A stretch of DNA of 64,000 nucleotides from Pecten maximus (GCF_902652985.1 NC_047015.1:41106001-41170000); one strand, 5' to 3'. Positions 4,005 to 62,124 are shown, counted from the stretch's first letter. Notes: generated by a model not told the origin, from the letters alone. Numbers and translations are program-made.

Positions 4005-4161
4005 TTTCAGATGAAATTGCTATCTCATTCCATGGAACTCTTTTGCGTTGAAAAGTCTTTGTTTTACAGCGCGGTTTTGCCTTTAAATGTTCTAGTTTGG
4101 CAGGATAGTTATTGAACACCTTCTGATGAACTTTTCTTGAATGAGGATTGTGTGTGTGGAT

Positions 4162-4219
4162 TTACAACATAGTGGTGCCCTCGGCAACTCCTATTCCATG
4201 CTGGGTGGTTCCATCATCA
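4162..4219 (-). CDS. cadherin terminal coding exon 85
   Basis: phase 2; DDGTTQHGIGVAEGTTML-TAA; class I PDZ ligand. Confidence 0.82.
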
Positions 4220-7200
4220 CTGAAACAGAAGACGACTTAAATTAAAAAATTGCATACAGTAGGGCACTAAATGTTTTTGAGGTCAAAATACTAGTGTCTG
4301 TTTACATCAGAATTCATGTAAACAAACTATTACAAAATAAAGCATGTTAAGAATCTAGCAATTTCAAACTCATAAAAAGTATCAATCTTGATAAACGTGA
4401 AAACAAACTCTATCAAGTTTACACATAAAATATAGTGTAAATTAAATTTGATGCAAATACATAGTGTTAAGATACAAAGACAACTAAAGGAACAAACCGA
4501 GACCTGAGAATGTAATGCAAATATCCAATATGCAAATAAGTGTATACCTTTGTACAATGTATAAGTAAACTCCATAATCACACATCTGTTAAGTTTTTGA
4601 CTGGAGCCTCCAGAGTCAGATTATTTCACTCAATTTAACATTCTGCAGTGCAAACTGAATATTTTTGAAAATCAATTATTTTTAATGAATATGTCACCAC
4701 TTGACAGGTTTGGAATTTTCTCTCATGAAATATCATGAATTAAATAAAATACTTACTGCACAAATATGGGGTTGACAGCTGCTGGTGATCTAATTTGGTC
4801 ATCGTCGTGAGGTTCGATGTTCACTTCCTCTCCGAGATTAAGATTGACAATATCCATATTATGTATAGCCTCATCGGGAGGCACATACATATTCAGACTC
4901 TGAAAGTCAGAAATGGTATTTAGTCAAAATTCATTCACCAATTAACTAATGATTTGAAAGAAAATTAGATATGTTTTTTTTCATAATTTGTATATAATGT
5001 TTGTTACAGATGCATAAATTTTTTTTTCAGTAATGATGTCTTTTTTTCTTTTTTAAATATGTGCATAATATACCTGTGTCTCATACTCCCGCAGGAAACT
5101 TGGAGGCTCCATGAAGTCAGGCTGGTCATAGCTAGCCTGGTAGATACGATACTGGTTGATGTACTTGGTGTATCTAAGGAAATGAAACGATGAAAATCAG
5201 GCATGAGTTAATAAGTCGTCTTTCAGTTAAACACATTATGATCAATGTTAAGAAGAATAAAATCCATTCAGCACACATAAACATCTACTTAACACATATT
5301 TGAGGTTTAGAAGTGTATACCCCACACAACCTTGAGGTCAATAACTGTTTACCACGCTAAACCACGAGGTCCATAACTGTTTACCCCACTCAACCATGAG
5401 GTTGATAGCTGTACACCCCATTCAACTGTCATGTCAATAACTGTTTTTACCCCACTCAACCGTCAGGTCAATAACTGTTTACCCCACTCAACCACGAGGT
5501 CAATAACTGTTTACCCCACTCAACCACAGGTTAATAACTGTTTACCCCACTCAACCATGAGGTCAATAACTGTTTACCCCACTCAACCACGAGGTCAATA
5601 ACTGTTTACCCCACTCAACCACAAGGTCAATAACTGTTTACCCCACTCAACCACAAGGTCAATAACTGTTTACCCCACTCAACCACGAGGTCAATAACTG
5701 TTTACCCCTCTAAACCACCAGGTTAATAACTGTTTACCCCACTCAACCACGAGGTCAATAACTGTTTACCCCACTCAAACACGAGGTCAATAACTGTTTA
5801 CCCCTCTAAACATTCAACAATGTGGTCAGAAACTGTGTAACTCAACCATGAGGTTAATAATTGTATAACTCACTCGGCCATGAGGTTAACAATTTATACC
5901 CCACTCAACCATGAGGTCAATAACTGTTTACCCCACTCAACCATGAGGTTAATAACTGTTTACCCCACTCAAACATGAGGTCAATAACTGTTTACCCCAC
6001 TCAAACATGAGGTTAATAACGATACCCTACTCAACCACGAAGTCAATAACTGTATATCCCACTCAAACATGAGGTTAATACCTCACTCAACAATCATTAA
6101 CCTCAAATCTGAGGTCTGAGCATATCCTACTTAAGCCACATCAAACAAGGAATAATTAAAGTTATCCTACAATATCCGGTATAACCGTATAAAGGTAACT
6201 TAAGGTATAAAGAATTACCTTTAATAAGGAGACAAAGCTTTATTTATTGTAATGTGCCCTACCTGGAATGTGTGAACACTAGGACAATGATTCCAACGAT
6301 ACATAGTAGGATAATGATGGCTGCCAGGGCGACAAGTGCTGCCCATGGGTCGTCGATCCACCAAACGTAAGACTTAGTGAGACGAGTCTGGTACACATTG
6401 GCGTTAGCGTATGGCAGACGTATTTTCTCTACACTAAGTGATGTGTCAGCCTGTAGCCGGTTATTGAGGTTTGTAGTTTTATCAGCAGTAAACACTCTGA
6501 AAAGGAAAGTAAATTTAAGGTCATTTTTCCCTTTAAAATTATAGACGGGTGAAAATCTTAAGGATTGTTTGTGATAGTTATAGATACAAGAGTGTACTTT
6601 CAAGCTACATTAAGTGACAATTGTGATTGAGAAGAAATAAATATAAATAATCAGATTGTATGTATTTTTATTGTTTCAACTTTAAAAATCAATTGACCAT
6701 CTTATTGAAGACTTTAAAAACTCTGTATAAATTATATCTTAATCTGTTCAAGAAGGATGACAATACTGATAGGAGATATACATAAATGTTTTTGTATATT
6801 AATATTACATTGTTTGGAGATAAACACAAATGTTTTTGTATAATAATATTACATTACTTGAATGTACAAGTATTTGCGTACAGTATAACACTTGGAGGGA
6901 GGGAAGGAGGGATGGAGGGAAGGAGGGATGGAGGGCTGGAGGGAAGGAGAGAAAGAGGGAAGGAGGGATGGAGGGAAGGAGAGAAAGAGGGAAGGAGGGA
7001 GGTCAGTGTTTAGTATGAAAACCTACTCTGGCATCCTTGTGTTGTTGATCAGATTGTATGGTGTCCTCGGCTCTCCTAATACAAATATTACGTCGGTACT
7101 GTTAAATATAAAAAAAAAAATCAAAATTAGACCAGCAAAAAATATACATAAATACATCTTATATCAAGTGGAGAAGAGAACAAAAAAGTTTCACCTAGAC

Positions 7201-10200
7201 ATTGGACTGGAGGTGTAAACATATGGAGGATCACCTCCAGTTACCAGAGTTTATTTCCTTACAACACACTTGAGCATGCCCACTGAGACACAGATATTAA
7301 CTACAAGTAAATAGAATTTGTGTCAAATGGTTTTAAAATGAAGAAAATACTTTTGATAAGCAATGATATTCAATATCAAGTTTTTAGATGCAAGTTTAGC
7401 ACACTACGACAAGAACCCTTAAAATTGCTCTAAATTAGAAAATATTATCAGTTATACTCACCCTGCATCATCGATGCTGAGATCGTCAATTGCATCAAGG
7501 TTTCTACGACGTTCAATTCTTTCTATGATACACACTTTCTGGAATTCATCTTGAATAGCTCTGAAAACGAAATATACCATCAAATACCACACTTTATAAT
7601 ACAAAATCTTTGGTTTTTAATCCAAGCATAAAGATTAGCATGTTTTCAGTTGTGCCAGAATTCTTTGTAGTTCAGAATTTGCTTTTAAAACATCTTTTTC
7701 ACAAATTTATAATTGGAAAAACCCACTACACCCATAAATTATTGGCTTCTAATATAATTGTTACAAAAACAAAAAACAAATTTGGACACAAACCTGCGAA
7801 TCACTGCCTTTTTAGCTGCTGCATCTTCTGGGATCATGTTGTAAAGTACTAGTACAAAACGGTTGTAGTGGTAGATGATGTTAATCTGTCAAAACAAATA
7901 CATATTCTTACTTAATAAATGTAGAACCAAATACATGATATAAAACATAGACATACAACCTTTCACTGTGATTTTACCTTCGGTTTTCTACTCATGAACT
8001 TTGTGTAAATTATAAATGTGACATTGCCGTTTACAGCACATTGATGGACAAATATTGTACACGTCTCGGTTCATTGTCGTGGTTCATTGTCATGGTTCAT
8101 TGTCGTGGTTATCCGTAACAAATTGATATTGCTCTAAAATATGAGAACAAAATTTAAATATATATATATATACACACTTACAGTAATCAAGTCTGAATCG
8201 GATATAAAACTTCATACAATATATATATAACTAAATCTGTATATAACCAAGCACCTACCATCTGTATATTTCTATACTCAGACACCTACAATCTGTATAT
8301 TATATATTATACATGTATGTTATATTCATGTATACTCCTCCGACACTTACATAGGCTGTCGACTGAGTGACCTTTCGTTCATCAATTCTTGGGGCCATGT
8401 CTGTTGCCAGTATTGGAATTTTGTAAGTTTTTGCAGCCAGTGTTTCAGCGGAGAACTCTGTACTGGTTGTAAATGTTCCATCCACAGTATTCAGAAGGAA
8501 TGGCGGGTTTAGTGGCTCGGATGTCCGTTCATCCATAGAGTATCTTACAAGTCCCAAAAGTTCTGAATCTTCATCAGTTGCCTACAGGTTGAAGAAAATT
8601 CCAATAATTTAACAAAGAATTGATAATGCCTCTGTGAACCATACACAGATGTAAATCCTATTACAGAACATGTAGTAGTACTTCTTCAAATTTAAAAGTG
8701 AAAAAAAATGACAATACAATGTACACAAACACTTAAATTGCATTGATCCCAAGGTATTCACCTTTTGAGGATTAAAAACAGCTAGCATAAGGATAGAAGA
8801 TTGTTATATAGCTATGAACTTACATGAACTCTCATAACAGAAGCATCTGCGCGGACGTTGTAAGAAATGGCACCAAAGTATCGGTTTTCTGTGCCCAGAC
8901 TGTTACTTTGAAGTGGATAAATGTGTGGTTCATCGTACTGGAAGATGGGAGAGTTGTCGTTGACGTCCAGCACATCAATGATTACTGAAGCTATTGGGTG
9001 GGTGTTTTGAACTGGAAAAGAAGATTAACAATGAATGAATATTAATGGTTACATATGAATATTAATGGTTATATATGAATAATTATCGTTATATATGAAT
9101 ATTGATTAATTAATGAATATCAATGAGAATTAATGAATACAGGGAGGAAAACCATAAACACTATACACATTCTTTTGACTTGTTGAAATATTTTAAGTGC
9201 TCACAATTTTAAATTCTGCAATTTCTGGAAGATTATTAATTTGTTAGTGACAATGGCATTTGTTTATAAAAATAAACTTGAAGGAGTTTCTGGGAAGGTC
9301 AAGGAAGTGACCTATTTTCTAATATATTCCAAAAATTCATAAATGTACCATAGCAATACATTCTATGAATTACCTCTTCCAAAAAAAAATATTTTTGGTG
9401 AAAATATGCTCCCAATTTAACAAAATTTCTACAAAAACATGATGTTGCATTTTGAGAAATTGTAGATCATCAATAAAAAAATAACGACAAAATACAAAAA
9501 CAAAAAAGATATGACCTTATGAAAGTGAACTCAATTACATTTTCCTGATCGTTATTGTTATCTAATTTGCCAATAATTTCATCCCAACAGGTACGAATGC
9601 TTAACTTCAATTGAAATTACTATGGTCTAAATCATCATCTAGAAATAAACGTTTCTGTAATTACCATGTTTTCAGTAACTACTTCATCTTCACAGTAGCA
9701 TCCTTAACAGAATGCAACAACATCCTGGCCATTTATTTCATAATACTCAAAATAAACTATATATTCCAAATATTTGTCAGTAAGTAAGCAAATGCATTTT
9801 AAATAAGTTTAAATCATAGGAAAACTGTTATAAAGGAAAAACTTACTGAAGATCTGTCTCTTTTTACGACCGACAGCACCCTCGGCCACTTGTACTGTTA
9901 CATTATAATGCTTAGTAACTTCGTAGTCGAAGCCTGGTTCAATAAGCTTGAGTCCGCAGTTCTTCTGGAACTGGTCTGGGGCGATGGAGAAAGGAAGGCC
10001 TGTGAGATCGCCTAGTATGTTACACTGAGCTGTCTGTGAGGCTTGGTACTCTACGTCCATCAACAAGATCACCTGGTCAACATCTATGTTCTCCCTAAGT
10101 TGCAGACTGGAAAAAATATATACGTTCATGAAGGACTTCTTAACATTTCTCAATTTTCACAGTGAATGAAACCATAAAGAGACTCAAATCATAATTTTAT

Positions 10201-55200: not shown

Positions 55201-58200
55201 GCCCAGAGGGAAAGTCTCTGCAATATTCCTAGTGTACAAGTCCTGTGTGAATACTGGAGCTGCAGGATTCCTGTTGACTGGTATTCTTACAACTGTAACC
55301 ACACGGTTGTTAGGGTAGAAAGTGTCAAAGGCAGCAACCCTCAGCTGTAAGGTAAACATTTGTTAGATACAATTTTCATATTGATATCACAGGATACCAG
55401 ACCTTTTATTCCCTTACAAAATTAACATTAGTTTGATCATTAACATATATCTGATTTTTATAAATTTATTTGTAAACAAATACATATTTATATACACAAG
55501 TTTTACAAATTTCATATTTTGTCTCAGATTTCTATTTGACTTTGTTGACTTTGTCTTTAAGATACCAAAAGCAACTGACTTTGCAGTTTTAAGTTCTGAA
55601 CATCATGGCAAATGTGTTATATTATTTCTGAAATTAGATATTAACTTGATTACCTCATAAACGCCAGTTTGCAAGCTGTCCGAGGTGACCAGTCTGCTTA
55701 CAGTTACAGCACCCGAAACCAAACCAACATCAAAGAAGGAAGGTGCCGGATAAGTCCCCTCAACAACATAGTTAATTGTTTCCTGAAACAGAGTAAATGA
55801 CATTATAAGTGTATCCACTGATGTTAGACTTTATCTCAAGGGAGTTAAGTGTATCCACTGATGTTAGACTTGATCTCACAGGAGTTAAGTGTATCCACTG
55901 ATGTTAGACTTTATCTCAAGGGAGTTAAGTGTATACACTGATGTTAGACTTTATCTCAAGGGAGTTAAGTGTATCCACTGATGTTAGACTTTATCTCAAG
56001 GGAGTTAAGTGTAGCCACTGATGTTAGACTTTATCTCACAGGAGTTAAGTGTATACACTGATGTTAGACTTTATCTCAAGGGAGTTAAGTGTAGCCACTG
56101 ATGTTAGACTTTATCTCACAGGAGTTAAGTGTATCCACTGATGTTAGACTTGATCTCACAGGAGTTAAGTGTATACACTGATGTTAGACTTTATCCCATG
56201 GGAGTTAAGTGTATACACTGATGTTTGACTTTATCTCACGGGAGTTAAGTGTATACACTGATGTTAGACTTTATCTCAAGGGAGTTAAGTGTATCCACTG
56301 ATGTTAGACTTTATCTCACGGGAGTTAAGTGTATCCACTGATGTTAGACTTTATCTCACGGGAGTTAAGTGTATCCACTGATGTTAGACTTTATCTCACA
56401 GGAGTTAAGTGTATACACTGATGTTAGACTTTATCTCACAGGAGTTAAGTGTATCCACTGATGTTAGACTTTATCTCACGGGAGATAAGTGTATACACTG
56501 ATGTTAGACTTTATCTCACGGGAGATAAGTGTATACACTGATGTTAGACTTTATCTCACGGGAGTTAAGTGTATCCACTGATGTTAGACTTTATCTCACG
56601 GGAGTTAAGTGTATACACTGATGTTTGACTTTATCTCACAGGAGTTAAGTGTATACACTGATGTTAGACTTTATCTCACAGGAGTTAAGTGTATACACTG
56701 ATGTTAGACTTTATCTCACAGGAGTTAAGTGTATACACTGATGTTAGACTTTATCTCACGGGAGTTAAGTGTATACACTTATGTTAGACTTTATCTCACG
56801 GGAGTTAAGTGTATCCACTGATGTTAGACTTTATCACACGGGAGTTAAGTGTATCCACTGATGTTAGACTTTATCTCACGGGAGTTAAGTGTATACACTG
56901 ATGTTAGACTTTATCTCACGGGAGTTAAGTGTATACACTGATGTTAGACTTTATCTCACGGGAGTTAAGTGTATACACTGATGTTAGACTTTATCTCACA
57001 GGAGTTAAGTGTATACACTGATGTTAGACTTGATCTCACAGGAGTTAAGTGTATACACTGATGTTAGACTTTATCTCACGGGAGTTAAGTGTATACACTG
57101 ATGTTAGACTTTATCTCACGGGAGTTAAGTGTATACACTGATGTTTGACTTTATCTCACAGGAGTTAAGTGTATACACTGATGTTAGACTTTATCTCAAG
57201 GGAGTTAAGTGTATACACTGATGTTAGACTTGATCTCACGGGAGTTAAGTGTATCCACTGATGTTTGACTTTATCTCACGGGAGTTAAGTGTATACACTG
57301 ATGTTAGACTTTATCCCATGGGAGTTAAGTGTATACACTGATGTTAGACTTTATCTCACGGGAGTTAAGTGTATCCACTGATGTTTGACTTTATCTCACG
57401 GGAGTTAAGTGTATACACTGATGTTAGACTTTATCTCACAGGAGTTAAGTGTATACACTGATGTTAGACTTTATCTCACGGGAGTTAAGTGTATACACTG
57501 ATGTTAGACTTTATCTCACGGGAGTTAAGTGTATACACTTATGTTAGACTTTATCTCACGGGAGTTAAGTGTATCCACTGATGTTAGACTTTATCACACG
57601 GGAGTTAAGTGTATCCACTGATGTTAGACTTTATCTCACGGGAGTTAAGTGTATACACTGATGTTAGACTTTATCTCACGGGAGTTAAGTGTATCCACTG
57701 ATGTTAGACTTGATCTCACGGGAGTTAAGTGTATCCACTGATGTTTGACTTTATCTCACAGGAGTTAAGTGTATACACTGATGTTAGACTTTATCTCAAG
57801 GGAGTTAAGTGTATACACTGATGTTTGACTTTATCTCACTGGAGTTAAGTGTATACACTGATGTTAGACTTTATCTCACGGGAGTTAAGTGTATCCACTG
57901 ATGTTAGACTTTATCTCAAGGGAGTAAATGACTTTGTCACAAAATATATATTTTCATTAAGTTTTGATGTTACTATTTATCTCAAAAAAGAAAGTTTTGA
58001 TGTTACTATTTATCTCAAAAAAAGAAACAAACTTGTTTATAAATACCTCTAAATCAGCATCAGTAGCCTCCACAGTGTCTATAAGTTCTCCAACTGGCAC
58101 CACTTGTGCTATCTGGCGGCCGTAGTTGTTACGAGTGTATAAAGGTGGGAAATTGTCGCGGTTGATATTGATGGTCGCAGTCACACTTGTGCATTGCTGT

Positions 58201-61200
58201 GGTACTCGCTGGTCACATGCCCTAATGGTGATCTGTAATATTCAGACAGTAAAATGTAAGCAATGATATATACAGTACAGGTGTGAAATACACAAGGATG
58301 GAAATATGCAGGCGTGAAATGTAAAAGTACGAAAAGATACAAATGTGAACATTATTACATTATATTTGATGGATTTCAAACATTTTTTCTCCAGAATGAT
58401 GATAGTACTATACCCTATCTAGCGCCTGAGTGCCTTCTGAGAGGAGCTTCTTCAGGGTGATCAGTCCAGTGACAGGGTTGATGTAGTAGTACTCCAGAGC
58501 AAGGCTGTTACCAGTTATATCAAACCGTATCTCATCCTGTAAGTACAAATCACAAAATTGTAACACTGAAGAATACTACAAATAATGTAGCTGTAATATA
58601 TATCACTTGGCTTGAGAGGAATTCTGCATTCATTGCACAACATTATAATCATGGCCTATTCTTTGAATTATTAATAAAAAAAAAATGAAATAACAATAAT
58701 AATTCCACTGTTTCTTTCTAAGTGATGTCATATTAAATCAGAAACAAGAACAAATGAATTGATAAAACAGTTGAAAATTTGGAATTTTGTAATACTTTCG
58801 GAAGTATAAAGGGAAATAACTCTAGCATAACTTATAACTGCACAATTAGCATATAGTACCTTATATCTAATCCAGAAATTACACGTCACACTTACCCCAT
58901 CAGCATCAGTTGCGTTAATGTCTACGATTAGCGAGCCAAGTGGTATGTGGTCGTAGACTGTCCGGTCATACGGAGTGTTTATAAATACTGGGGCATTCCC
59001 GTTGCGGCTCACAAATACAGGTACAGTGGCTGTAGCTTGGTTTTCAGGGTAGACACTGTCATACGCGATCACGTGCAGCTGTAAAAATAGTTTATGGTAG
59101 CGTCATATTAAATTCAAATGGCATTTAAATCAAATTCATCATGAGTGATCACAAGTTACAGCCAAATTAATGTGGACTTACTGTTATAGACACATTCAGA
59201 CATATCTGAACAATGGTCATGTGACCTTCATTTATTTGGGCATGTACTATGATTTATCCTTAGGTAAGTTTCATTCCCCTGGGGAAAAATTATGATACAT
59301 TTTCCCTTCTGACTAGATGACAGATAAGCATACTTTTGAGACTACACTCAATGGACTTACCTGATAATTCTGTTGTACATCTCGTAACAAAAGGTTCTGG
59401 TTCTGGACAGACAGATAAGCGGTTGTTTTGTTGATAGAAAAGAAGGTAGCTGCAATACTGTCATGGATCACATCATACATGATTTGTCCCTGTAGACAAA
59501 AAAAACAGTTATATCAGCTGTGAAGTGTGAAAACAGCAGCTATAGGCAGAGCAATAACATAATCAAAAACTAAAATGTCACAATTAAAAAAAAAAGAAGA
59601 ATTTTAACTAAAAATAATGAAATAAAATTTTACCCTCCTGTCAGAATCAGTGGCCAAAATATTCGTGTAGAATACAGTGTTATCCACAGTGTTTTCGTTG
59701 GTGATGGCACTATAGGGCGTGTTTTGGAATTCTGGCGCGAAATTGTCCCGTAATACGATGACATGGACACGAGCCTGGCTCGTCCTGGCAGGATTACCTT
59801 GGTCAGATGCTTGTACATTGAACTGTCAATAGTAGAAAAGTTAACATTACCATAAAACACAAATAAATGCTTGTTACAAATAAATGCTTGTTACAAATAA
59901 ATGTGTGTTATGAGCCTTTTTTAAAATTCAGTGGCAGAAAAATCCTTCTGGGGTATACAAATGTGTTTTTTTAAAATTACATAATAAATTTTATTTACAT
60001 AACAGTGTTGCTTCTTCAACTTCTTAAGAAGAAAGCGTTTCAACTTTGATAGCATTCATAGCTAACAGGTTATCAATCTCAACCCAACGGGTTTCTTAAA
60101 CTAAGCAATTAGGAAATGAATCGAACTTGCTGTTAATTGTTAAATATTAATGGAGTGTCAGGGTTGGGGGCCCCTAGGTGGTGTCCTCACCGATTATTAT
60201 CAAAGACTAAAGCAGTGTTCATACACAAAATGTAAAGCAATAAATGTGTACCAAGTATATTAGAACTGATAGCTTTAGATAAAGTGTTAGACGAGGATAG
60301 AAGTCTTATATGAGTAAGTTGAATACTTACAGAGTAGTTGGCAACATTGGTCGAGGTAAGGAGACCTTGTAGAGTAATGACGCCAGAGTCAGCATTTATA
60401 AAGAAGAAGGTTGTGTACGGGGTACCATCTACAATGCTGAACTTTATCTGGTCCTAAAAAAGAAAACAACATTTTTAGTTTTTTAAAAACACAAAAGATT
60501 GAAAAAAAGCAATTTGGATTGAGCTGTATTTAGCTAGTCAGGGAATGGTTTCTGTAACTTCTAGACTAACATCTGGACTAGACAAAATTTCTTGTAACAT
60601 ATCCCCACAAAAAACAGGCTAGGGTAATTTATACCACCAGAAACAGATTAGATTATCATACTTCCCTAGAGACAAAATGGGGTTATTAACAGAACAGGGT
60701 TATCATACTTCCCTGGGGACAGAACAGGGTTATCATACTTCCCTGGGGACAGAACTGGGTTGTCATACTTCACTGGTGACAGAACTGGGTTATCATACTC
60801 CCCTGGGGACAGAACAGGGTTATCATACTCCCCTGGGGACAGAACAGGGTTATCATACTCCCCTGGGGACAGAACAGGGTTATCATACTCCCCTGGGGAC
60901 AGAACTGGGTTATCATACATCCTGGGGACAGAACAGAGTTATAACTCAATGTACTTACATTATCTGCATCATTTGCAGTGACTTGCAAAACAGTTGTTCC
61001 AAGGTCACGTTTTTCCTCAATGGGGGTTTGATAAAAGGTTGGGTTGAACACAGGTGGAAACTCGTTCCTCGTTACGAAGACATTGACAGTGGTAAAAGCT
61101 GTCTGGGTGGTCACATCAAAAGACACAGCCTTCACAAGCAACTGAAGTGGAACAAATTATTATTATATAACTACATACCGAATCACAGTTCTATATCTGT

Positions 61201-62124
61201 GCCCATTAAAGAGTAATTGAGCACAAATGAAATTATGATGGAATGACAGAATGATGGAGAAGGTTAACAAATTAGTTAAAATGGTGAGAACATATACAAT
61301 ATAATAGCAAATGGTTCCACATATGTGGTATAAGCACACTATTACATAATTGCTGTGCTTTTCTGACCTATGTAATTAATCATGAGGCCTGACTTACAAT
61401 GTAATGGGTGAGTTGGGAGCTGTCAGTCTTCAGATCTTGTTGTACCAGGATGTCACCGCTGTTCTTATTCAAGGAGAAATAAGTAGGCCCCGGATCTCTC
61501 CCGGTCAGGGTGTACTCGATGCTTACCTACAAATTGTTACATGTCAAAGTTGTTAAAGTGACAAGCTAAACATTTAAAAAGAACAATCCACTTCTGTTAC
61601 TTTTGTTTTCACAATCAAATTAAAATTACAGAAAGTTACATATTTTACTTAATATAAACAATATAAATACTTGACAAATATGTTGATAAAAAAAAATACA
61701 AACATTGATAACCCACACTGACATTCAATGAAAACACATTTAAAGGATTATCAGAAACCTTGTAATTAGTGTCAGTCTATCAGAAACCTTGTAATTAGTG
61801 TCAGTCTATCAGAAACCTTGTTAGTGTCAGTCTATCAGAAACCTTATCAGTATCAGCCTATCAGAAACCTTAAAATGTGATCTGATAACCTTTCAGATTA
61901 TTAAAAAAGTTTAAAATCATATTTCTAAAATCAAAACTTAAACTTACCCCTGGTGAAGCAACTACACGGGTCACAAAGTCGTTGATTGGTGAATTTTCGC
62001 TTTTAGTCACATTGTACACGGGAAGTGCGAAGGACAGAACGCCCGAGCTTCGCAGGACATTGACAGTTAATGTGGCAGTCGCCTGTTTAATGGGCACACC
62101 TTGATCCATAGCGACAATAGTCAG
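4162..62124 (-). CDS. Giant non-classical cadherin (PCDH15/Cad99C/CDH23-like architecture), 5'-partial, 85 exons, >=4512 aa, >=40 EC repeats + membrane-adjacent domain + TM + PDZ-binding tail
   Basis: 85 exons, all bounded by AG/GT with compatible phases, concatenate into one open frame of 13,539 nt ending in TAA at 4162-4164. Recurrent cadherin motifs are present (PxF, xE, AxDxD, FxIxxxTGxI, AxDxGxP), with one canonical FDYE...DVNDNSP linker, a 24-aa hydrophobic helix and C-terminal TTML. No start codon or signal peptide is in the window. The family assignment comes from architecture, not from a search. Confidence 0.92.
4757..4899 (-). CDS. cadherin exon 84 (cytoplasmic)
   Basis: 143 nt, 0-2; SLNMYVPP...AVNPIFV. 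Confidence 0.85.
5074..5173 (-). CDS. cadherin exon 83 (cytoplasmic)
   Basis: 100 nt, 2-0; YTKYINQYRIY...PPSFLREYETQ. Confidence 0.85.
5315..6085. repeat. 32-bp minisatellite, ~22 copies
   Basis: Unit ACTCAACCACGAGGTCAATAACTGTTTACCCC, degenerate at both ends. Confidence 0.95.
6263..6496 (-). CDS. cadherin exon 82 (transmembrane helix at 6274-6345)
   Basis: 234 nt, 2-2; VFTADK...WAALVALAAIIILLCIVGIIVLVFTHS. Confidence 0.9.
6893..7003. repeat. purine-rich GGAG/GGAA low-complexity tract
   Basis: ggagggaaggagggatgg... repeats. Confidence 0.9.
7027..7098 (-). CDS. cadherin exon 81 (membrane-adjacent domain)
   Basis: 72 nt, 2-2; TDVIFVLGEP...NTRMP. Confidence 0.8.
7462..7560 (-). CDS. cadherin exon 80 (membrane-adjacent domain)
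   Basis: 99 nt, 2-2; AIQDEFQKVCIIERIERRR...IDDA. Confidence 0.85.
7794..7885 (-). CDS. cadherin exon 79 (membrane-adjacent domain)
   Basis: 92 nt, phase 0-2; INIIYHYNRFVLV...KAVIR. Confidence 0.85.
8351..8581 (-). CDS. cadherin exon 78 (last EC)
   Basis: 231 nt, 0-0; ATDEDSELLG...TQSTAY. Confidence 0.9.
8824..9011 (-). CDS. cadherin exon 77 (only canonical DxNDN linker)
   Basis: 188 nt, phase 1-0; (I)QNTHPIASVIIDVLDVNDNSPIF...VMRVH. Confidence 0.9.
9847..10106 (-). CDS. cadherin exon 76 (FDYE motif, RKKR furin site)
   Basis: 260 nt, phase 2-1; (Y)LQLRENID...FDYE...GRKKRQIF. Confidence 0.88.
10310..10705. mobile_element. MITE-like element with terminal hairpin
   Basis: ATCTAACAGTATCTTCATTAATACCAAA (~10574-10601) pairs imperfectly with TTTGGTATAACTGAAGACACTGTTAGAT (~10668-10695); CACTAGTGAAAAATATCA / TGATATTTTTCACTGGTG inverted pair. 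Confidence 0.55.
10741..10868 (-). CDS. cadherin exon 75
   Basis: 128 nt, phase 0-2; VQIQACDESWKPKC...GFKQPVY. Confidence 0.87.
11116..11250 (-). CDS. cadherin exon 74
   Basis: 135 nt, 0-0; TKNAQFTYS...NISPIT. Confidence 0.87.
11621..11824 (-). CDS. cadherin exon 73
   Basis: 204 nt, 0-0; LTVVASDTS...VPLSAG. Confidence 0.9.
12045..12240. repeat. ~45-bp tandem repeat, ~4 copies
   Basis: TGATGTTTGGAACAAAAACAAG(T)GGCCATTATAGGCAGGTGGCC. Confidence 0.9.
12296..12610 (-). CDS. cadherin exon 72 (fused long+short exon)
   Basis: 315 nt, 0-0; INVLATDQS...ADNEYI. Confidence 0.9.
12958..13110 (-). mobile_element. degenerate SINE-like remnant
   Basis: The minus strand begins GGTCGGTTGGCACAGTATTAACACACTCACCTTTCAC, a decayed tRNA-like head, in a GC-richer island within an AT-rich intron. 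Confidence 0.3.
13137..13259 (-). CDS. cadherin exon 71
   Basis: 123 nt, 0-0; DPIVYSIVP...QVERYI. Confidence 0.9.
13423..13805 (+). mobile_element. short HINE-like element
   Basis: 13-bp inverted repeat ATACCCCCGCAAT (13454-13466) / ATTGCGGGGGTAT (13788-13800); 3' hairpin TATACCCCC..GGGGGTATA; (GACA)n(GACG)n microsatellite; A-rich ends. Confidence 0.75.
13881..14063 (-). CDS. cadherin exon 70
   Basis: 183 nt, 0-0; MFVVAKDSG...ATDADN. Confidence 0.9.
14336..14482 (-). CDS. cadherin exon 69
   Basis: 147 nt, 0-0; GDNGKIVYF...TTQSYT. Confidence 0.9.
14636..14818 (-). CDS. cadherin exon 68
   Basis: 183 nt, 0-0; IRVYGYRLN...ATDQDQ. Confidence 0.9.
15246..15407. repeat. ~160-bp near-perfect palindrome (hairpin MITE), adjacent to a second inverted-repeat segment 14999-15246
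   Basis: TAAGCATTGAACTGCTTTCATTTGGAAGTTATGGGCTGATGAATG ... CATTCATCAGCCCATAACTTCCAAATGAAAGCAGTTCAATGCTTA. Confidence 0.9.
15477..15605 (-). CDS. cadherin exon 67
   Basis: 129 nt, 0-0; STIVYEIRG...LTNMYT. Confidence 0.9.
16069..16251 (-). CDS. cadherin exon 66
   Basis: 183 nt, 0-0; FTVGVRDQG...TDPLAG. Confidence 0.9.
16629..16763 (-). CDS. cadherin exon 65
   Basis: 135 nt, 0-0; TSFNSKLNY...PQDVWQ. Confidence 0.85.
16795..17856. repeat. 21-bp minisatellite, ~50 copies, filling intron 64
   Basis: Unit GGCATTGTAATAGAGGGTAAA; it produces the spurious 220-aa ORFs. Confidence 0.97.
17881..18066 (-). CDS. cadherin exon 64
   Basis: 186 nt, 0-0; LRVIVRDTS...TDPDPV. Confidence 0.9.
18173..18425 (+). 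mobile_element. decayed HINE-like element
   Basis: GTCCCCAACCAA near the 5' end versus TTGGTAGGGGAC near the 3' end; internal GTGACCTTGA; (CATA)n tract. Confidence 0.45.
18538..18675 (-). CDS. cadherin exon 63
   Basis: 138 nt, 0-0; MPENNLFYS...KPLDYI. Confidence 0.9.
19045..19230 (-). CDS. cadherin exon 62
   Basis: 186 nt, 0-0; LLIEAYDTK...TDSDTT. Confidence 0.87.
19539..19667 (-). CDS. cadherin exon 61
   Basis: 129 nt, 0-0; GAIRYEVKG...LFPNYF. Confidence 0.9.
19780..19965 (-). CDS. cadherin exon 60
   Basis: 186 nt, 0-0; FNVFVSDSR...SDSDLQ. Confidence 0.9.
20413..20538 (-). CDS. cadherin exon 59
   Basis: 126 nt, 0-0; DRLIYTSDM...TPSRFD. Confidence 0.87.
20766..20948 (-). CDS. cadherin exon 58
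   Basis: 183 nt, 0-0; LRVEVYDSY...ATDADG. Confidence 0.9.
21289..21980 (+). mobile_element. HINE-like element
   Basis: 5' CAAGAGGCCCATGGGCC plus GTCATCTGA; 3' GACG/GACA tract then hairpin GTCATC..CCTTCGG..TCAGATGAC; internal repeat at ~370-bp spacing and 3x21-bp repeat at ~21599-21665. Confidence 0.7.
22014..22142 (-). CDS. cadherin exon 57
   Basis: 129 nt, 0-0, AAG acceptor; GNMTYKLVG...ETMEYT. Confidence 0.86.
22313..22501 (-). CDS. cadherin exon 56
   Basis: 189 nt, 0-0, AAG acceptor; VQIEATDNG...TDQDRR. Confidence 0.86.
22535..22750. repeat. 23/29-bp tandem repeat, ~8 copies
   Basis: (ATACC)CTAATCTGTACCAGGTTATCAACC. Confidence 0.92.
23268..23393 (-). CDS. cadherin exon 55
   Basis: 126 nt, 0-0; STLTCSVIG...VTEIYT. 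Confidence 0.87.
23650..24055. repeat. 47-bp tandem repeat of exon 54 3' end + 5' splice site, 8 donor copies
   Basis: Unit CCAGCAATACTTACACTATCCGGGTCGGATACATTGAGGGCTAGGGA; donors at 24018, 23971, 23924, 23877, 23830, 23783, 23736, 23689. Confidence 0.96.
24019..24201 (-). CDS. cadherin exon 54 (donor tandemly duplicated)
   Basis: 183 nt, 0-0; LEVVAYDTG...VSDPDS. Confidence 0.88.
24383..24511 (-). CDS. cadherin exon 53
   Basis: 129 nt, 0-0; GDIVYETVG...NLLKYT. Confidence 0.9.
24865..25898. repeat. 42-bp (some 31-bp) tandem repeat of exon 52 3' end + 5' splice site, ~25 copies
   Basis: Unit TTGACCTTGACACCTGTACTTACCAGCGTTGGTGTCCTTGTA; the minus strand reads ...ACGCTG|GTAAGTAC. Confidence 0.96.
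25881..26066 (-). CDS. cadherin exon 52 (3' end ambiguous: tandem donor ladder)
   Basis: 186 nt to the first donor, 0-0; CQVAVTDNG...TRTPTL. Confidence 0.82.
26195..26317 (-). CDS. cadherin exon 51
   Basis: 123 nt, 0-0; DTLEYSLTG...NDPQYN. Confidence 0.9.
26673..26855 (-). CDS. cadherin exon 50
   Basis: 183 nt, 0-0; LTVRAYDNN...ANDNDN. Confidence 0.9.
27246..27557 (-). CDS. cadherin exon 49 (fused long+short exon)
   Basis: 312 nt, 0-0; MVVRATDSG...RTAVYT. Confidence 0.9.
27968..28440. repeat. 39-bp minisatellite, ~12 copies
   Basis: AATTGATCATAATTAACTCTTTGACAGTGCTGTAGTAAC. Confidence 0.96.
28451..28585 (-). CDS. cadherin exon 48
   Basis: 135 nt, 0-0; DEVVYDLIG...SVSSFS. Confidence 0.9.
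29362..29544 (-). CDS. cadherin exon 47
   Basis: 183 nt, 0-0; LTIEAYDSA...ASDADG. Confidence 0.9.
29557..30452. repeat. ~58-61-bp minisatellite, ~15 copies
   Basis: AGTCTTATAATCCCTCACTGTTATCCTACACGATGAGAGGATATAAATCAGTAGACAAATT. Confidence 0.96.
30718..30843 (-). CDS. cadherin exon 46
   Basis: 126 nt, 0-0; GNMTYVVTG...ARTTYI. Confidence 0.9.
31155..31340 (-). CDS. cadherin exon 45
   Basis: 186 nt, 0-0; FTVRASDQS...TDADLR. Confidence 0.9.
31739..31855 (-). CDS. cadherin exon 44
   Basis: 117 nt, 0-0; DTVQYTVTS...AQKSFT. Confidence 0.88.
32485..32670 (-). CDS. cadherin exon 43
   Basis: 186 nt, 0-0; LRVQVYDSE...ASDADN. Confidence 0.9.
33122..33250 (-). CDS. cadherin exon 42
   Basis: 129 nt, 0-0; ETGGKLEYK...NALNYV. 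Confidence 0.87.
34050..34232 (-). CDS. cadherin exon 41
   Basis: 183 nt, 0-0; MTIEASDQR...TDVDLS. Confidence 0.9.
34717..34830 (-). CDS. cadherin exon 40
   Basis: 114 nt, 0-0; DVMAFRILG...DPVTYV. Confidence 0.88.
35047..35232 (-). CDS. cadherin exon 39
   Basis: 186 nt, 0-0; MTVAVYDSY...AGDIDN. Confidence 0.9.
35782..35901 (-). CDS. cadherin exon 38 (acceptor duplicated 49 nt upstream)
   Basis: 120 nt, 0-0; GTLQYMVSG...NVVNFV. Confidence 0.87.
35888..35986. repeat. perfect 49-bp tandem duplication containing the exon 38 3' splice site
   Basis: TATTGGAGGGTTCCCTGTCAAACACATCTCAATGTCTAAATACATATCT x2. Confidence 0.95.
36476..36670 (-). CDS. cadherin exon 37
   Basis: 195 nt, 0-0; FNVRARDQG...SDADRR. 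Confidence 0.9.
37062..37196 (-). CDS. cadherin exon 36
   Basis: 135 nt, 0-0; DDVRYNIVN...PVAQYS. Confidence 0.9.
37504..37689 (-). CDS. cadherin exon 35
   Basis: 186 nt, 0-0; LRVEAYDMA...AIDPDG. Confidence 0.9.
37976..38110 (-). CDS. cadherin exon 34
   Basis: 135 nt, 0-0; LPSRIMYEI...NTLVYT. Confidence 0.87.
38501..38686 (-). CDS. cadherin exon 33
   Basis: 186 nt, 0-0; MVIEAADQR...VDDDLL. Confidence 0.9.
38893..39337. repeat. 32-bp minisatellite, ~14 copies
   Basis: GAATACAGCGATCCTYTCYAAGTTAACAATTT. Confidence 0.96.
39470..39595 (-). CDS. cadherin exon 32
   Basis: 126 nt, 0-0; DVVTYRIVS...LFNNTI. Confidence 0.9.
39601..39905. repeat. ~62-bp tandem repeat, ~5 copies
   Basis: AAACACAAACCCC..TAATAAAATACCAGATAATACAGTATTGAGTAAAATATAT. 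Confidence 0.88.
40315..40503 (-). CDS. cadherin exon 31
   Basis: 189 nt, 0-0; VELSVYDSL...SDSDPL. Confidence 0.87.
40795..40923 (-). CDS. cadherin exon 30
   Basis: 129 nt, 0-0; GVLVYEITG...NLVRYT. Confidence 0.9.
41189..41374 (-). CDS. cadherin exon 29
   Basis: 186 nt, 0-0; FTVYARDQR...RDTDLT. Confidence 0.9.
41495..46829. repeat. 5.3-kb 29/31-bp satellite filling intron 28 (~175 copies)
   Basis: Unit ACTAGAACTGTACTGGGTATTATCTATAG with or without AG/GG; begins ~5 nt from the exon 28 donor. Confidence 0.98.
46835..46957 (-). CDS. cadherin exon 28
   Basis: 123 nt, 0-0; DIPVYRMTG...PTVQYN. Confidence 0.9.
47237..47755. repeat. 26-bp minisatellite, ~20 copies
   Basis: ACACCATCAGTAGTACCTACAATGTA. 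Confidence 0.96.
47788..47970 (-). CDS. cadherin exon 27
   Basis: 183 nt, 0-0; FKVMTFDTG...AVDLNG. Confidence 0.9.
48294..48410 (-). CDS. cadherin exon 26
   Basis: 117 nt, 0-0; GQVVYEVVV...LDITYR. Confidence 0.88.
48808..48993 (-). CDS. cadherin exon 25
   Basis: 186 nt, 0-0; LGVQACDTG...IDNSPL. Confidence 0.9.
49272..49415 (-). CDS. cadherin exon 24
   Basis: 144 nt, 0-0; DDISYSIVD...DITRFV. Confidence 0.9.
49613..49798 (-). CDS. cadherin exon 23
   Basis: 186 nt, 0-0; YLVVAYDSL...TDNDNH. Confidence 0.9.
50335..50466 (-). CDS. cadherin exon 22
   Basis: 132 nt, 0-0; GSVKYRAIG...QYSQFT. Confidence 0.88.
50799..50990 (-). CDS. cadherin exon 21
   Basis: 192 nt, 0-0; MTVQATDDR...TDADVK. Confidence 0.9.
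51435..51560 (-). CDS. cadherin exon 20
   Basis: 126 nt, 0-0; DTMTYTALP...RRLSFQ. Confidence 0.88.
51622..51778. repeat. ~47-bp tandem repeat, 3 copies
   Basis: TAATCTAAACTTTATATATGTTACTACACGACACAGAATATAAACAC. Confidence 0.9.
51871..52053 (-). CDS. cadherin exon 19
   Basis: 183 nt, 0-0; LVVEAYDSQ...ASDNDG. Confidence 0.9.
52244..52366 (-). CDS. cadherin exon 18
   Basis: 123 nt, 0-0; GYMVYQVVG...INTEYF. Confidence 0.9.
52596..52787 (-). CDS. cadherin exon 17
   Basis: 192 nt, 0-0; MNVRVRDQR...RDLDMQ. Confidence 0.9.
52949..53092 (-). CDS. cadherin exon 16
   Basis: 144 nt, 0-0; DTLRYELLS...RPTLYQ. Confidence 0.9.
53102..53255. repeat. 50-bp tandem repeat, 3 copies
   Basis: ATAGTCATATAACTCCATAATTAGACTGCACAGTCATCTAATATCTAACG. 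Confidence 0.92.
53334..53510 (-). CDS. cadherin exon 15
   Basis: 177 nt, 0-0; VILTAYDSG...ASDGDG. Confidence 0.9.
53730..53852 (-). CDS. cadherin exon 14
   Basis: 123 nt, 0-0; GQMVYNIVG...IVEQYL. Confidence 0.9.
54077..54253 (-). CDS. cadherin exon 13
   Basis: 177 nt, 0-0; FTVTVRDVG...NDQDLQ. Confidence 0.88.
54431..54559 (-). CDS. cadherin exon 12
   Basis: 129 nt, 0-0; DKLAFYMDA...IYNQFT. Confidence 0.9.
54565..54880. repeat. degenerate ~30-bp tandem repeat
   Basis: AAAAAGTTACACAAATGTTACCATAGTAAC-like units. Confidence 0.75.
55162..55344 (-). CDS. cadherin exon 11
   Basis: 183 nt, 0-0; LRVAAFDTF...ATDADN. Confidence 0.9.
55654..55782 (-). CDS. cadherin exon 10
   Basis: 129 nt, 0-0; ETINYVVEG...QTGVYE. 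Confidence 0.9.
55806..57925. repeat. 40-bp minisatellite, ~53 copies, filling intron 9
   Basis: TAAGTGTATMCACTGATGTTAGACTTTATCTCACGGGAGT. Confidence 0.98.
58047..58232 (-). CDS. cadherin exon 9
   Basis: 186 nt, 0-0; ITIRACDQR...TDADLE. Confidence 0.9.
58414..58536 (-). CDS. cadherin exon 8
   Basis: 123 nt, 0-0; DEIRFDITG...TQALDR. Confidence 0.87.
58896..59078 (-). CDS. cadherin exon 7
   Basis: 183 nt, 0-0; LHVIAYDSV...ATDADG. Confidence 0.9.
59361..59489 (-). CDS. cadherin exon 6
   Basis: 129 nt, 0-0; GQIMYDVIH...VQQNYQ. Confidence 0.9.
59634..59822 (-). CDS. cadherin exon 5
   Basis: 189 nt, 0-0; FNVQASDQG...TDSDRR. Confidence 0.9.
60331..60453 (-). CDS. cadherin exon 4
   Basis: 123 nt, 0-0; DQIKFSIVD...NVANYS. 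Confidence 0.9.
60688..60945. repeat. 30-bp minisatellite, ~8 copies
   Basis: GGGGACAGAACAGGGTTATCATACTCCCCT. Confidence 0.95.
60959..61141 (-). CDS. cadherin exon 3, long type X
   Basis: 183 nt, 0-0; LLVKAVSFD...ANDADN. Confidence 0.9.
61398..61526 (-). CDS. cadherin exon 2, short
   Basis: 129 nt, 0-0; VSIEYTLTG...QLTHYI. Confidence 0.85.
61749..61870. repeat. ~29-bp tandem repeat, ~4 copies
   Basis: TATCAGAAACCTTGTAATTAGTGTCAGTC. Confidence 0.85.
61948..62124 (-). CDS. cadherin exon 1 (in window), long type Y
   Basis: AG/GT, 177 nt, phase 0-0; LTIVAMDQG...VVASPG. Confidence 0.88.

What the first reader, a model, noticed from the sequence alone, without database searches (positions are those of the whole stretch)
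4162..62124. A >40-EC cadherin with a tip-link-type (PCDH15/Cad99C/CDH23-like) membrane end
Seen: at least 40 complete EC repeats, with the gene still open at the 5' end. They are followed by a ~130-aa non-EC segment, a TM helix and a short tail ending TTML. There are no EGF/LamG domains and no catenin-binding tail. Known: Fat has 34 EC plus EGF/LamG; Dachsous and CDH23 have 27; PCDH15/Cad99C have 11 EC, and PCDH15/CDH23 carry a membrane-adjacent domain and a class I PDZ ligand. The tail segment PPSFLREYETQ resembles my recollection of the Cad99C tail (unverified). Inference: a microvillar/ciliary link cadherin whose ectodomain has expanded past Fat length (~180-200 nm at ~4.5-5 nm per EC). 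Automated pipelines would probably mislabel it Fat-like.
Basis: partly seen in the sequence, partly recalled or inferred. Interest (0 to 1): 0.8.

Follow-up and report, generated by a model that had tools for sequence, protein, structure and literature searches.

The report
Giant 85-repeat cadherin, tip-link-like anchor
The window holds the 3' half of one intact 129-kb mollusc gene for a roughly 9,300-residue cadherin with about 85 repeats, whose membrane end is built like the hearing tip-link cadherins; it belongs to a family already in databases under the wrong name "Fat-like", and is probably related to the 77-repeat octopus sucker cadherin.

Summary
On the minus strand the window holds 40 complete cadherin (EC) repeats. 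These are followed by a ~135-aa non-EC segment, one TM helix and a ~105-aa tail ending TTML. There is no EGF, LamG or catenin-binding domain.

The gene runs 71 kb beyond the window. It has one signal-peptide exon, about 8 canonical N-terminal ECs, 74 atypical ECs in strictly alternating two-exon units, and 3 C-terminal ECs. That gives about 85 ECs in all, with no in-exon stops.

The non-EC segment folds as a ferredoxin-like membrane-adjacent domain (MAD). Fold searches return PCDH15 MAD12 and CDH23 MAD28 first, so the "tip-link-type membrane end" holds at the level of architecture and fold. By sequence alone the match is not significant. The tail shows no similarity to PCDH15, Cad99C or CDH23.

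The gene is not unique. The same MAD-TM-tail module and atypical "xRNxxxPxF" linkers occur in bivalves, gastropods, cuttlefish, a brachiopod and a nemertean. These are annotated "protocadherin Fat 4-like" and reach at least 7,916 aa. Repeats are orthologous one-to-one between oyster and scallop, so the array is ancient.

A 77-EC octopus cadherin is published and is probably the same family. Function as a link or tether is inferred, not shown.

The parts
4162..4219 (-). Last coding exon (4165-4219) and TAA stop (4162-4164). It codes ...DDGTTQHGIGVAEGTTML, a class I PDZ-ligand-type C-terminus (T-x-L).
   Evidence: Read directly from the sequence: acceptor AG at 4221-4220, in phase with the preceding donor CA|GTAAGT. 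The same (G/S)TTML or TTIL ending occurs in 10 orthologues.
4757..4899 (-). Cytoplasmic exon 2: SLNMYVPPDEA...AAVNPIFV. It holds the family motif and an NPxF/Y-type motif.
   Evidence: Splice sites read. 66% identical to the Ylistrum orthologue. The motifs recur across the family.
5074..5173 (-). Cytoplasmic exon 1: YTKYINQYRIYQASYDQPDFMEPPSFLREYETQ.
   Evidence: 82% identical to Ylistrum, 68% to Potamilus and 50% to Patella.
6263..6496 (-). Exon coding the last strand of the membrane-adjacent domain, the juxtamembrane SYVWWIDDPW motif and the single TM helix (AALVALAAIIILLCIVGIIVLVF).
   Evidence: 57-81% identical to orthologues. It is the only TM-type match of the family profile in this genome.
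7038..7885 (-). Three small exons (7781-7885, 7464-7562, 7038-7100) coding most of the ferredoxin-like membrane-adjacent domain (MAD).
   Evidence: Found by tblastn with orthologues. The fold was modelled on orthologues. PCDH15 MAD12 and CDH23 MAD28 are the top PDB matches.
8306..10868 (-). Three C-terminal ECs of more canonical type. Exons: 10743-10868, 9815-10105 (with RKKR near 9847-9890), 8818-9012 (canonical DVNDNSP linker) and 8306-8581 (last EC).
   Evidence: Weak Pfam Cadherin hits. CDH23 ECs are the best PDB sequence matches. Collinear with orthologues. The R-x-K-R site sits at the same place in 15 of 19 family members.
11113..62124 (-). In-window part of the atypical EC array: 38 'A' and 37 'B' exons in strict alternation (about 38 ECs), plus a final middle-of-EC exon at 11113-11250 that follows the last A exon. 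The linker is xRNxxxPxF instead of DxNDNxPxF.
   Evidence: R 86%, N 78%, P 96%. The 11113-11250 exon was found by tblastn. Exon-by-exon collinearity with the Ylistrum balloti protein at a mean of 73% identity. The only stops lie at over-extended HSP ends or in introns read through.
62342..64000 (.). Intronic 27-nt tandem repeat between the exon at 61954-62124 and the next upstream exon, which lies just beyond the window (relative 64274-64417).
   Evidence: Periodic open frames and self-matches. The next exons were found in L009.

Best explanation
What is shown. The window holds the 3' 45% of one intact protein-coding gene. Its CDS spans G000:C1:41110162-41239205 on the minus strand, about 129 kb and about 165 exons. 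The product is a type I membrane cadherin of roughly 9,300 residues. In order it has:
- a signal peptide;
- about 8 N-terminal ECs with canonical Ca2+-binding linkers;
- 74 atypical ECs, each split into two exons;
- 3 more canonical ECs, with a furin-type RKKR site in the penultimate one;
- a ferredoxin-like membrane-adjacent domain (MAD) directly before a single TM helix;
- a ~105-aa tail with conserved PPSFLREYETQSLNMYVPPDE and NPxF/Y motifs and a T-x-L C-terminus.

It is the scallop member of a giant-cadherin family found in molluscs (bivalves, gastropods, cephalopods), a brachiopod and a nemertean, and so probably lophotrochozoan-wide.

What is inferred. It probably works as a very long extracellular link or tether, up to about 380 nm if straight.
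- The canonical tip binds a partner in trans.
- The 74 atypical repeats act as a spacer. Their linkers keep the motifs of Ca2+ site 3 (DxD, XDX, the N of DxN) but have lost those of sites 1 and 2, with a near-invariant Arg in that place.
- EC-MAD near the membrane may make parallel dimers, as in PCDH15.
- The tail is held by PDZ and PTB-type adaptors.
- Furin may cut the filament from its membrane stub.
- Expression on apical protrusions (microvilli or cilia) is a guess by analogy. The only published clue is high expression of the 77-EC octopus cadherin in suckers.
For: One gene:
- Strict ABAB exon alternation over 103 kb.
- One Kozak-type ATG plus signal peptide with a GTAAGT donor.
- One TM, and a family profile whose TM and tail part matches only this locus in the genome.
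- No cadherin exons in the 30 kb upstream or 20 kb downstream that were searched.
- 6,855 of 7,076 residues of the Ylistrum balloti model lie collinear on it at 73% identity.
- No in-exon stops.
- Cuttlefish open reading frames of 5,252 aa, on assembly contigs of only 17-23 kb, belong to the same family.

MAD:
-. Top hits are PCDH15 MAD12 and CDH23 MAD28, rmsd 2.4-3.4 A over about 115-120 residues, followed by Nup54 as reported for MAD12 itself (10.1101/460097).
- hhalign places weak hits about 110 aa before the TM in 10 CDH23-like proteins.

Family and age.

Linker motifs.

Expression: runs from at least 6 studies hold 0.18-0.27 of the sampled words of 4100-10099, against an exon share of about 0.27. 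Two of these runs are on record as RNA.
Against: - No reads could be laid, so there is no direct transcript evidence in this species for exon joining, the start, the end or the tissue.
- The exons were never joined and the protein itself was not folded. Structure rests on orthologues that are 57-85% identical in this region.
- MAD similarity to PCDH15 is not significant by sequence alone (E 0.38).
- The tail has no detectable relative outside the family.
- Two unionid mussel models with both ends present have only about 34 ECs. Length therefore either varies or those models skip exons.
- Ca2+ occupancy, dimerisation, PDZ binding, furin cleavage and cell type are all inferred.
Confidence: 0.62

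Rival explanations
1. It is a shed or matrix-anchoring filament rather than a cell-to-cell or protrusion-to-protrusion link. Furin cuts at RKKR in the penultimate EC. The ~9,000-aa ectodomain then becomes part of an apical extracellular matrix or cuticle (sucker lining, periostracum, glycocalyx), or anchors that layer to the membrane stub.
For: - An R-x-K-R site at the same position in 15 of 19 family members.
- The published octopus 77-EC cadherin is enriched in suckers, which bear a cuticle (PMC6339937; the cuticle point rests on my own knowledge).
- The atypical repeats have lost two of the three Ca2+-site motif sets, as might suit a structural spacer.
Against: - Furin-cut cadherins and receptors such as Fat or Notch usually stay non-covalently joined (established knowledge), so cleavage does not imply shedding.
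- A conserved MAD, TM, PDZ ligand and NPxY-type motif argue for a regulated, cytoskeleton-linked receptor.
- The site is missing in unionids, Gigantopelta and cuttlefish.
Confidence: 0.2
2. It is a Fat- or Dachsous-type planar-polarity or growth-control cadherin, as its database names say, that has lost its EGF/LamG modules.
For: - Names given by pipelines.
- Pfam Cadherin_FAT4_N and CELSR2-type EC hits in orthologues.
- FAT proteins are also predicted to carry a MAD, and Fat is proteolytically processed (10.1101/460097; the processing point rests on my own knowledge).
Against: - No EGF or LamG in the exons or in three whole orthologues.
- The MAD abuts the TM as in PCDH15, CDH23 and CDHR2, not as in FAT.
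- In hhalign the Cys-rich Fat-like proteins give no positional MAD match, while CDH23-like ones do.
- The tail is unrelated to anything outside the family.
- The Fat-family Pfam hits fall on EC repeats only.
Confidence: 0.1
3. The 129-kb array is an artefact: an assembly expansion of a shorter tandem array, several adjacent cadherin genes, or a decaying pseudogene.
For: - No read-level check was possible.
- Introns are full of tandem repeats.
- Patella has three adjacent gene models of this family.
Against: - Repeats are only about 35% identical to each other and 73% identical to their positional counterparts in another scallop.
- 48 of 51 oyster units match the scallop unit at the same distance from the C-terminus.
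- One signal peptide and one TM.
- No in-exon stops.
Confidence: 0.04

Closest known systems
Protocadherin-15 (PCDH15; fly Cad99C) and cadherin-23 (CDH23), the tip-link cadherins
   Same: - Long EC chain followed directly by a ferredoxin-like membrane-adjacent domain, one TM, a short or medium tail and a class I PDZ-ligand-type C-terminus (STSL and ITEL versus TTML).
- No EGF/LamG.
- Some non-canonical linkers.
- Fold searches give MAD12 and MAD28 as best matches.
- The profile alignment runs through the MAD and TM for PCDH15 only.
   Different: - About 85 ECs against 11 and 27.
- 74 of them have an xRNxxxPxF linker.
- A furin site in the penultimate EC.
- The tail has no detectable sequence similarity.
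- MAD similarity is not significant by sequence alone.
- Handshake-type EC1-2 features are not shown.
Octopus bimaculoides 77-EC cadherin enriched in suckers (Wang and Ragsdale 2017, as cited in PMC6339937, PMC6062618 and PMC9115989)
   Same: A mollusc cadherin with more than 70 ECs. A cuttlefish orthologue of the window gene exists, at least 5,252 aa, with the same MAD-TM-tail and partly in repeat register with scallop. The octopus gene is therefore probably the same family.
   Different: The octopus sequence and the original papers were not available here, so identity of the family is inferred. The scallop gene has about 85 ECs. I could not find whether the MAD, the PDZ ligand, the RN linkers or the furin site have been described.
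Database family 'protocadherin Fat 4-like' of molluscs, Lingula and Tubulanus (for example Ylistrum balloti, 7,076 aa partial; Elysia crispata, 7,916 aa partial; Saccostrea cucullata, 5,858 aa)
   Same: True orthologues and paralogues: RN linkers, MAD, the WW(I/L)DDPW juxtamembrane motif, the PPSFLREYETQSLNMYVPPDE tail and a TTML or TTIL end.
   Different: Most models are N-terminally truncated and none is characterised. The window gene, extended here to its signal peptide, appears to be the most complete and longest.
Fat / Fat-like and Dachsous cadherins
   Same: Very long EC chains. A MAD-like module is predicted after the last EC in FAT. Proteolytic processing.
   Different: Fat has 34 ECs followed by EGF and LamG modules before the TM, and a different tail. 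Dachsous has 27 ECs. None of these features is present here.
CDHR2 (protocadherin-24), the intermicrovillar link cadherin
   Same: ECs followed by a predicted MAD next to the TM and a PDZ-binding tail (10.1101/460097).
   Different: 9 ECs.

Membership tests
Cadherin superfamily | Tandem extracellular cadherin (EC) repeats | tested here: met
   Pfam PF00028 is above its cut-off on the two fused exons (42.3 and 32.2 bits). Whole orthologues give 24-30 stretches. There are 150 alternating half-domain exons.
MAD-bearing link cadherins (PCDH15 / CDH23 / CDHR2 type) | Ferredoxin-like membrane-adjacent domain directly between the last EC and the TM, with no EGF/LamG | tested here: met
   The exons are present in the window. 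[quoted passage not shown] The top 8-9 PDB matches are PCDH15 MAD12 and CDH23 MAD28. There is no EGF/LamG. The test was made on orthologues, not on the joined window protein.
MAD-bearing link cadherins (PCDH15 / CDH23 / CDHR2 type) | C-terminal class I PDZ ligand that binds harmonin-type scaffolds | tested here: inconclusive
   The motif T-M-L is present and T-x-L is conserved in most of the family. Binding cannot be tested with these tools.
PCDH15 / Cad99C or CDH23 orthology | Sequence-level homology of the MAD, TM and cytoplasmic tail | tested here: not met
   The MAD+TM profile against PDB gives PCDH15 at E 0.38 and 1.5 only. The TM+tail search among proteins of 1,268-4,035 aa returns family members only. 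No Pfam tail family was found. The word search needs shared 5-mers, so distant homology is not excluded.
PCDH15 / Cad99C or CDH23 orthology | EC number (11 or 27) and handshake-type EC1-2 tip | tested here: not met
   There are about 85 ECs. The N-terminal 300 aa of an orthologue match all cadherin classes alike, with PCDH15 and CDH23 not ranked first. The tip features themselves were not examined.
Fat cadherins | About 34 ECs followed by EGF-like and laminin G modules before the TM | tested here: not met
   No EGF or LamG in the exons or in orthologues. Fewer than 8 Cys occur in the last 700 aa of family members, against 30-50 in the 900 aa before the TM of Fat-like hits.
Lophotrochozoan giant 'RN-linker' cadherin family | xRNxxxPxF linkers in most ECs, a MAD, the SY(V/I)WW.DDPW motif, the PPSFLREYETQSLNMYVPPDE tail and a T-x-L end | tested here: met
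Octopus 77-EC sucker cadherin | Orthology to the published octopus gene | not testable with these tools
   The octopus sequence and the original papers are not held. Only a cuttlefish orthologue could be shown.

The most novel reading that the evidence does not exclude
The 74 'RN' repeats are a structurally new class of cadherin linker. A near-invariant arginine takes the place of Ca2+ at sites 1 and 2, while site 3 is kept. This gives a filament of about 330 nm that is largely independent of calcium. The family is the lophotrochozoan sister of the CDH23/PCDH15 tip-link cadherins. It shares their MAD-TM anchoring and is used for mechanical links on sensory or adhesive apical protrusions, such as octopus suckers or scallop cilia and microvilli.
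Probability: 0.2. Interest if true: 0.8.

Novelty: new member of a known kind. Interest (0 to 1): 0.55.

Why it matters
With about 85 repeats this would be the longest cadherin ectodomain I know of. It is longer than Fat (34), CDH23 (27) and the published 77-EC octopus cadherin.

The individual repeats have kept their positions between oyster and scallop, and partly as far as cephalopods. Selection therefore acts on the whole length, not just on "many repeats".

The finding links an uncharacterised, mislabelled invertebrate family to the MAD-bearing link cadherins of hearing and brush borders. It suggests several concrete experiments:
- where a 0.3-0.4 micrometre protein link sits in a mollusc epithelium;
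- whether MAD-driven dimerisation and PDZ anchoring predate vertebrate hair cells;
- how a cadherin chain behaves when two of its three Ca2+ sites are replaced by an arginine.

In practical terms, the "Fat 4-like" annotations of this family are misleading and most models are truncated.

Tried and rejected
Exon-level searches
- Exon-by-exon Pfam and PDB sequence searches of the juxtamembrane and TM exons gave nothing useful. The exons are too short.

Alignments and profiles
- A combined alignment of A and B exons with the two fused exons was mis-aligned by MAFFT and dropped.
- The MAD+TM profile against PDB by sequence was not significant.
- A local MAD HMM against the 150 best library hits gave only weak hits in CDH23-like proteins. 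hhalign was then used (a first try timed out).

Family look-ups
- Pfam families PF28399 and PF28393, listed for orthologues, are not in the local library, so I could not learn what they are.

Their best match to cuttlefish is only 30%.
No splice joints, strand, ends or tissue could be read.

Own-genome searches
- A search of the genome with a fish CDH23 MAD+tail found nothing, which is uninformative. The whole protein was too long for the tool.

Literature
- Albertin 2015 and Wang and Ragsdale 2017 are not held.

Explanations considered and rejected
- Recent tandem amplification: rejected, because the repeats are about 35% alike and positionally orthologous across bivalves.
- Several genes.
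- A pseudogene.

Full report
**Method limits**

All searches with window sequence were made exon by exon. Where a continuous chain was needed (profiles, folding), I used natural orthologous proteins returned by the tools as stand-ins.

**What is in the window**

The sequence is AT-rich eukaryotic DNA. Nearly all cadherin-like open frames are on the minus strand.

Each EC repeat is coded by two exon types:
- Type A carries the end of one EC, the linker and the start of the next, up to the ATDxD motif.
- Type B carries the middle of an EC (Y.I....FF.I...TG.I).

HMMs built from the gene's own exons find 38 A and 37 B exons in the window, in perfect ABAB order.

The membrane end was read base by base, with canonical splice sites:
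- TM exon at 6263-6496.
- Tail exons at 5074-5173, 4757-4899 and 4165-4219.
- Stop at 4164-4162.
- The tail includes PPSFLREYETQ and ends AEGTTML.

I first took the segment between the last EC and the TM to be only about 45 aa. Comparison with orthologues then revealed three more small exons, at 7781-7885, 7464-7562 and 7038-7100.

No EGF, LamG or classical-cadherin tail domain is found in the exons or in whole orthologues.

**The whole gene**

The window is G000:C1:41106001-41170000, in a 918.3-Mb assembly of 3,983 contigs. From memory, these figures fit the king scallop Pecten maximus. The closest protein, at 73% identity, is from another scallop.

I fetched 100 kb upstream and 20 kb downstream. 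The findings are:
- The ABAB series continues for 36 more A exons, to 50.5 kb beyond the window.
- Upstream of that lie exons for about 8 ECs with canonical linkers of the INDINDNTPEF and VLDVQDNVPRF type.
- At the far end is a signal-peptide exon with ACCATGG start context and a GTAAGT donor.
- No cadherin exon lies in the next 30 kb upstream or in the 20 kb downstream.

The total is 8 + 74 + 2 linkers, so about 85 ECs (give or take two at the N-terminus). The protein is about 9,300 residues and the CDS span is 129 kb.

**One gene, intact**

- An NCBI model from the scallop Ylistrum balloti (7,076 aa, 5'-partial) lies collinear on the locus, from 35 kb beyond the window down to the tail.
- It does so in 119 pieces that cover 6,855 residues at 73% identity.
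- The only stops are at over-extended alignment ends or in an intron that was read through.
- The TM and tail part of the family profile matches no other place in this genome.
- RNA evidence in this species is indirect. Runs from at least six studies hold 0.18-0.27 of the sampled words of 4100-10099, close to the exon share of about 0.27. Two of these runs are on record as RNA.

**The family**

A profile of 65 A exons was scored against 1.84 billion proteins. It found thousands of cadherins, but proteins rich in the RN linker and lacking DxND linkers form a small set:
- Haliotis
- Patella
- Potamilus
- Bulinus
- Lingula (brachiopod)
- Tubulanus (nemertean)

All are named "protocadherin Fat 1/4-like" or "hypothetical".

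Searches with the C-terminal region added more members:
- Sinanodonta
- Solemya
- Saccostrea (5,858 aa)
- Crassostrea
- Batillaria
- Gigantopelta
- Aplysia
- Babylonia
- Plakobranchus
- Elysia (7,916 aa, partial)
- Ylistrum
- cuttlefish open reading frames of 5,252 aa, on assembly contigs of 17-23 kb

Most models start inside the array without a signal peptide, so they are truncated.

Shared features of the family:
- The MAD.
- The SY(V/I)WW.DDPW juxtamembrane motif.
- The PPSFLREYETQSLNMYVPPDE tail motif.
- An AVNP(I/V)(Y/F) motif.
- A T-x-L end in most members.
- An R-x-K-R site 125-165 aa before the MAD in 15 of 19 members.

**Age of the array**

I counted units from the C-terminus and asked where each unit's best match lies in the scallop protein:

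| Species compared with scallop | Units with best match at the same position |
|---|---|
| Oyster | 48 of 51 |
| Elysia (sea slug) | 23 of 69 |
| Cuttlefish | 16 of 47 |

In each case this is the dominant offset. The giant array is therefore old and its repeats are individually conserved. It is not a recent expansion in this genome.

Two unionid models that have both ends present carry only about 34 ECs. They map to the N-terminal ~16 and C-terminal ~19 units of the scallop gene. This is either a real secondary loss or exon skipping by the predictor.

**The membrane end**

Sequence profile, last EC to tail:
- A profile of this region from five family members matches ECs of every cadherin class in the PDB.
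- Only PCDH15 chains (6c13, 6c14, 6eet, 6bxz, 6c10) align in one stretch beyond the EC, through the non-EC domain and in two cases through the TM.

First AlphaFold model, Potamilus C-terminus:
- Overall pLDDT is 55, and 65-84 in the EC+MAD part.
- Its nine best Foldseek matches are PCDH15 EC10/11-MAD12 and CDH23 EC25-MAD28, at E 1e-13 to 5e-10, against 3e-8 for other cadherins.

Second model, MAD+TM only, from ten further orthologues with the scallop Ylistrum first:
- pLDDT is 78.9, with the same fold plus a TM helix.
- Its top eight matches are again MAD12 and MAD28, at rmsd 2.4-3.4 A over about 115-120 residues.
- The ninth is Nup54, the neighbour reported for MAD12 itself (10.1101/460097).

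Limits of the resemblance:
- By sequence alone the MAD+TM profile reaches only E 0.38 for PCDH15.
- hhalign against CDH23-like proteins gives low probabilities (11-29%). The hit is nevertheless always about 110 aa before the TM.
- The same preprint predicts MADs in FAT and CELSR too, but there they precede EGF/LamG modules.
- A MAD abutting the TM is the PCDH15/CDH23/CDHR2 arrangement.
- The tail is family-specific. A TM+tail search among proteins of 1,268-4,035 aa, a range that includes Cad99C, PCDH15 and CDH23, returned family members only.
- The N-terminal 300 aa of an orthologue do not single out any cadherin class.

**The atypical repeats**

Conservation of the Ca2+-binding motifs over the repeats:

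| Motif | State in this array |
|---|---|
| XDX (A.D.G.P) | D present in 92% |
| DxD | 100% of aligned rows |
| XEX | E present in 69% |
| DxNDN | replaced by x-R-N-x-x (R 86%, N 78%) |
| DRE | reduced to a single D in 49% |

From the classical cadherin Ca2+ sites (established knowledge), this keeps the ligands of site 3 and removes most of those of sites 1 and 2. An arginine stands where the ions would sit. I infer partly calcium-free linkers, but this was not tested. Partly or fully Ca2+-free linkers are known in PCDH15 and N-cadherin.

**Comparison with the literature**

Secondary sources state that Octopus bimaculoides has a cadherin with 77 ECs (or "over 70") that is highly expressed in suckers (PMC6339937; PMC6062618 and PMC9115989). 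The original papers were not available. Because a cuttlefish orthologue of the window gene exists, I think the octopus gene is the same family, but this is inference.

**Verdict**

- The architectural reading, a tip-link-type membrane end mislabelled Fat-like, is supported at the level of fold and domain order.
- The claimed tail likeness to Cad99C is not supported.
- The gene is twice as long as seen in the window.
- It belongs to an old family found across molluscs, a brachiopod and a nemertean, already in databases and probably already noticed in octopus. I rate it a new member of a known kind, of moderate to good interest.
- Its function as a link or tether is a reasoned guess.

Noticed in passing
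window 62342-64000 (continues into L009); also 16767-17900, 24814-26186, 27894-28446 and 5300-6100: Several introns of the gene hold long tandem arrays, for example a 27-nt unit read as IDWRNYRCI... over more than 1.6 kb, and a ~40-nt unit in the intron between the TM and tail exons. They create long spurious open frames on both strands. Earlier notes s1-802711 and s1-802918 read two of them as ladders of splice donors.
   Followed up: no
window 9847-9890: A furin-type RKKR lies at the end of the penultimate EC. An R-x-K-R site stands at the same distance from the MAD in 15 of 19 family members, from molluscs to Lingula and Tubulanus. It is missing in unionid mussels, Gigantopelta and cuttlefish.
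   Followed up: partly
G000:C6 (about 7.3, 20.8-23.1, 27-28, 30.8, 36.5-38.5 and 45.3-45.7 Mb) and C7 (5.39, 19.49, 28.5, 32.37 Mb): The EC part of the family profile hits dozens of long single-exon open frames of 400-1,773 aa, clustered on two chromosomes. This looks like a clustered-protocadherin-type expansion in this bivalve.
   Followed up: no
orthologues P0062, P0155, P0157, P0163, P0164 and others: The precomputed domain lists of family members carry two Pfam accessions, PF28399 and PF28393, that are absent from the local Pfam copy. They may already model the MAD or another part of this family.
   Followed up: partly
P0002 (Nematostella, 7,285-7,723 aa), P0010 (Sycon, 6,688 aa), P0014 (7,250 aa, source unknown), P0039 (Monosiga, 7,042 aa): Other very long cadherins, with 51-61 matched stretches each, exist in a cnidarian, a sponge and a choanoflagellate. 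They have canonical DxND linkers and no detectable MAD of this type, so giant size arose more than once.
   Followed up: partly
They were left alone afterwards.
   Followed up: no
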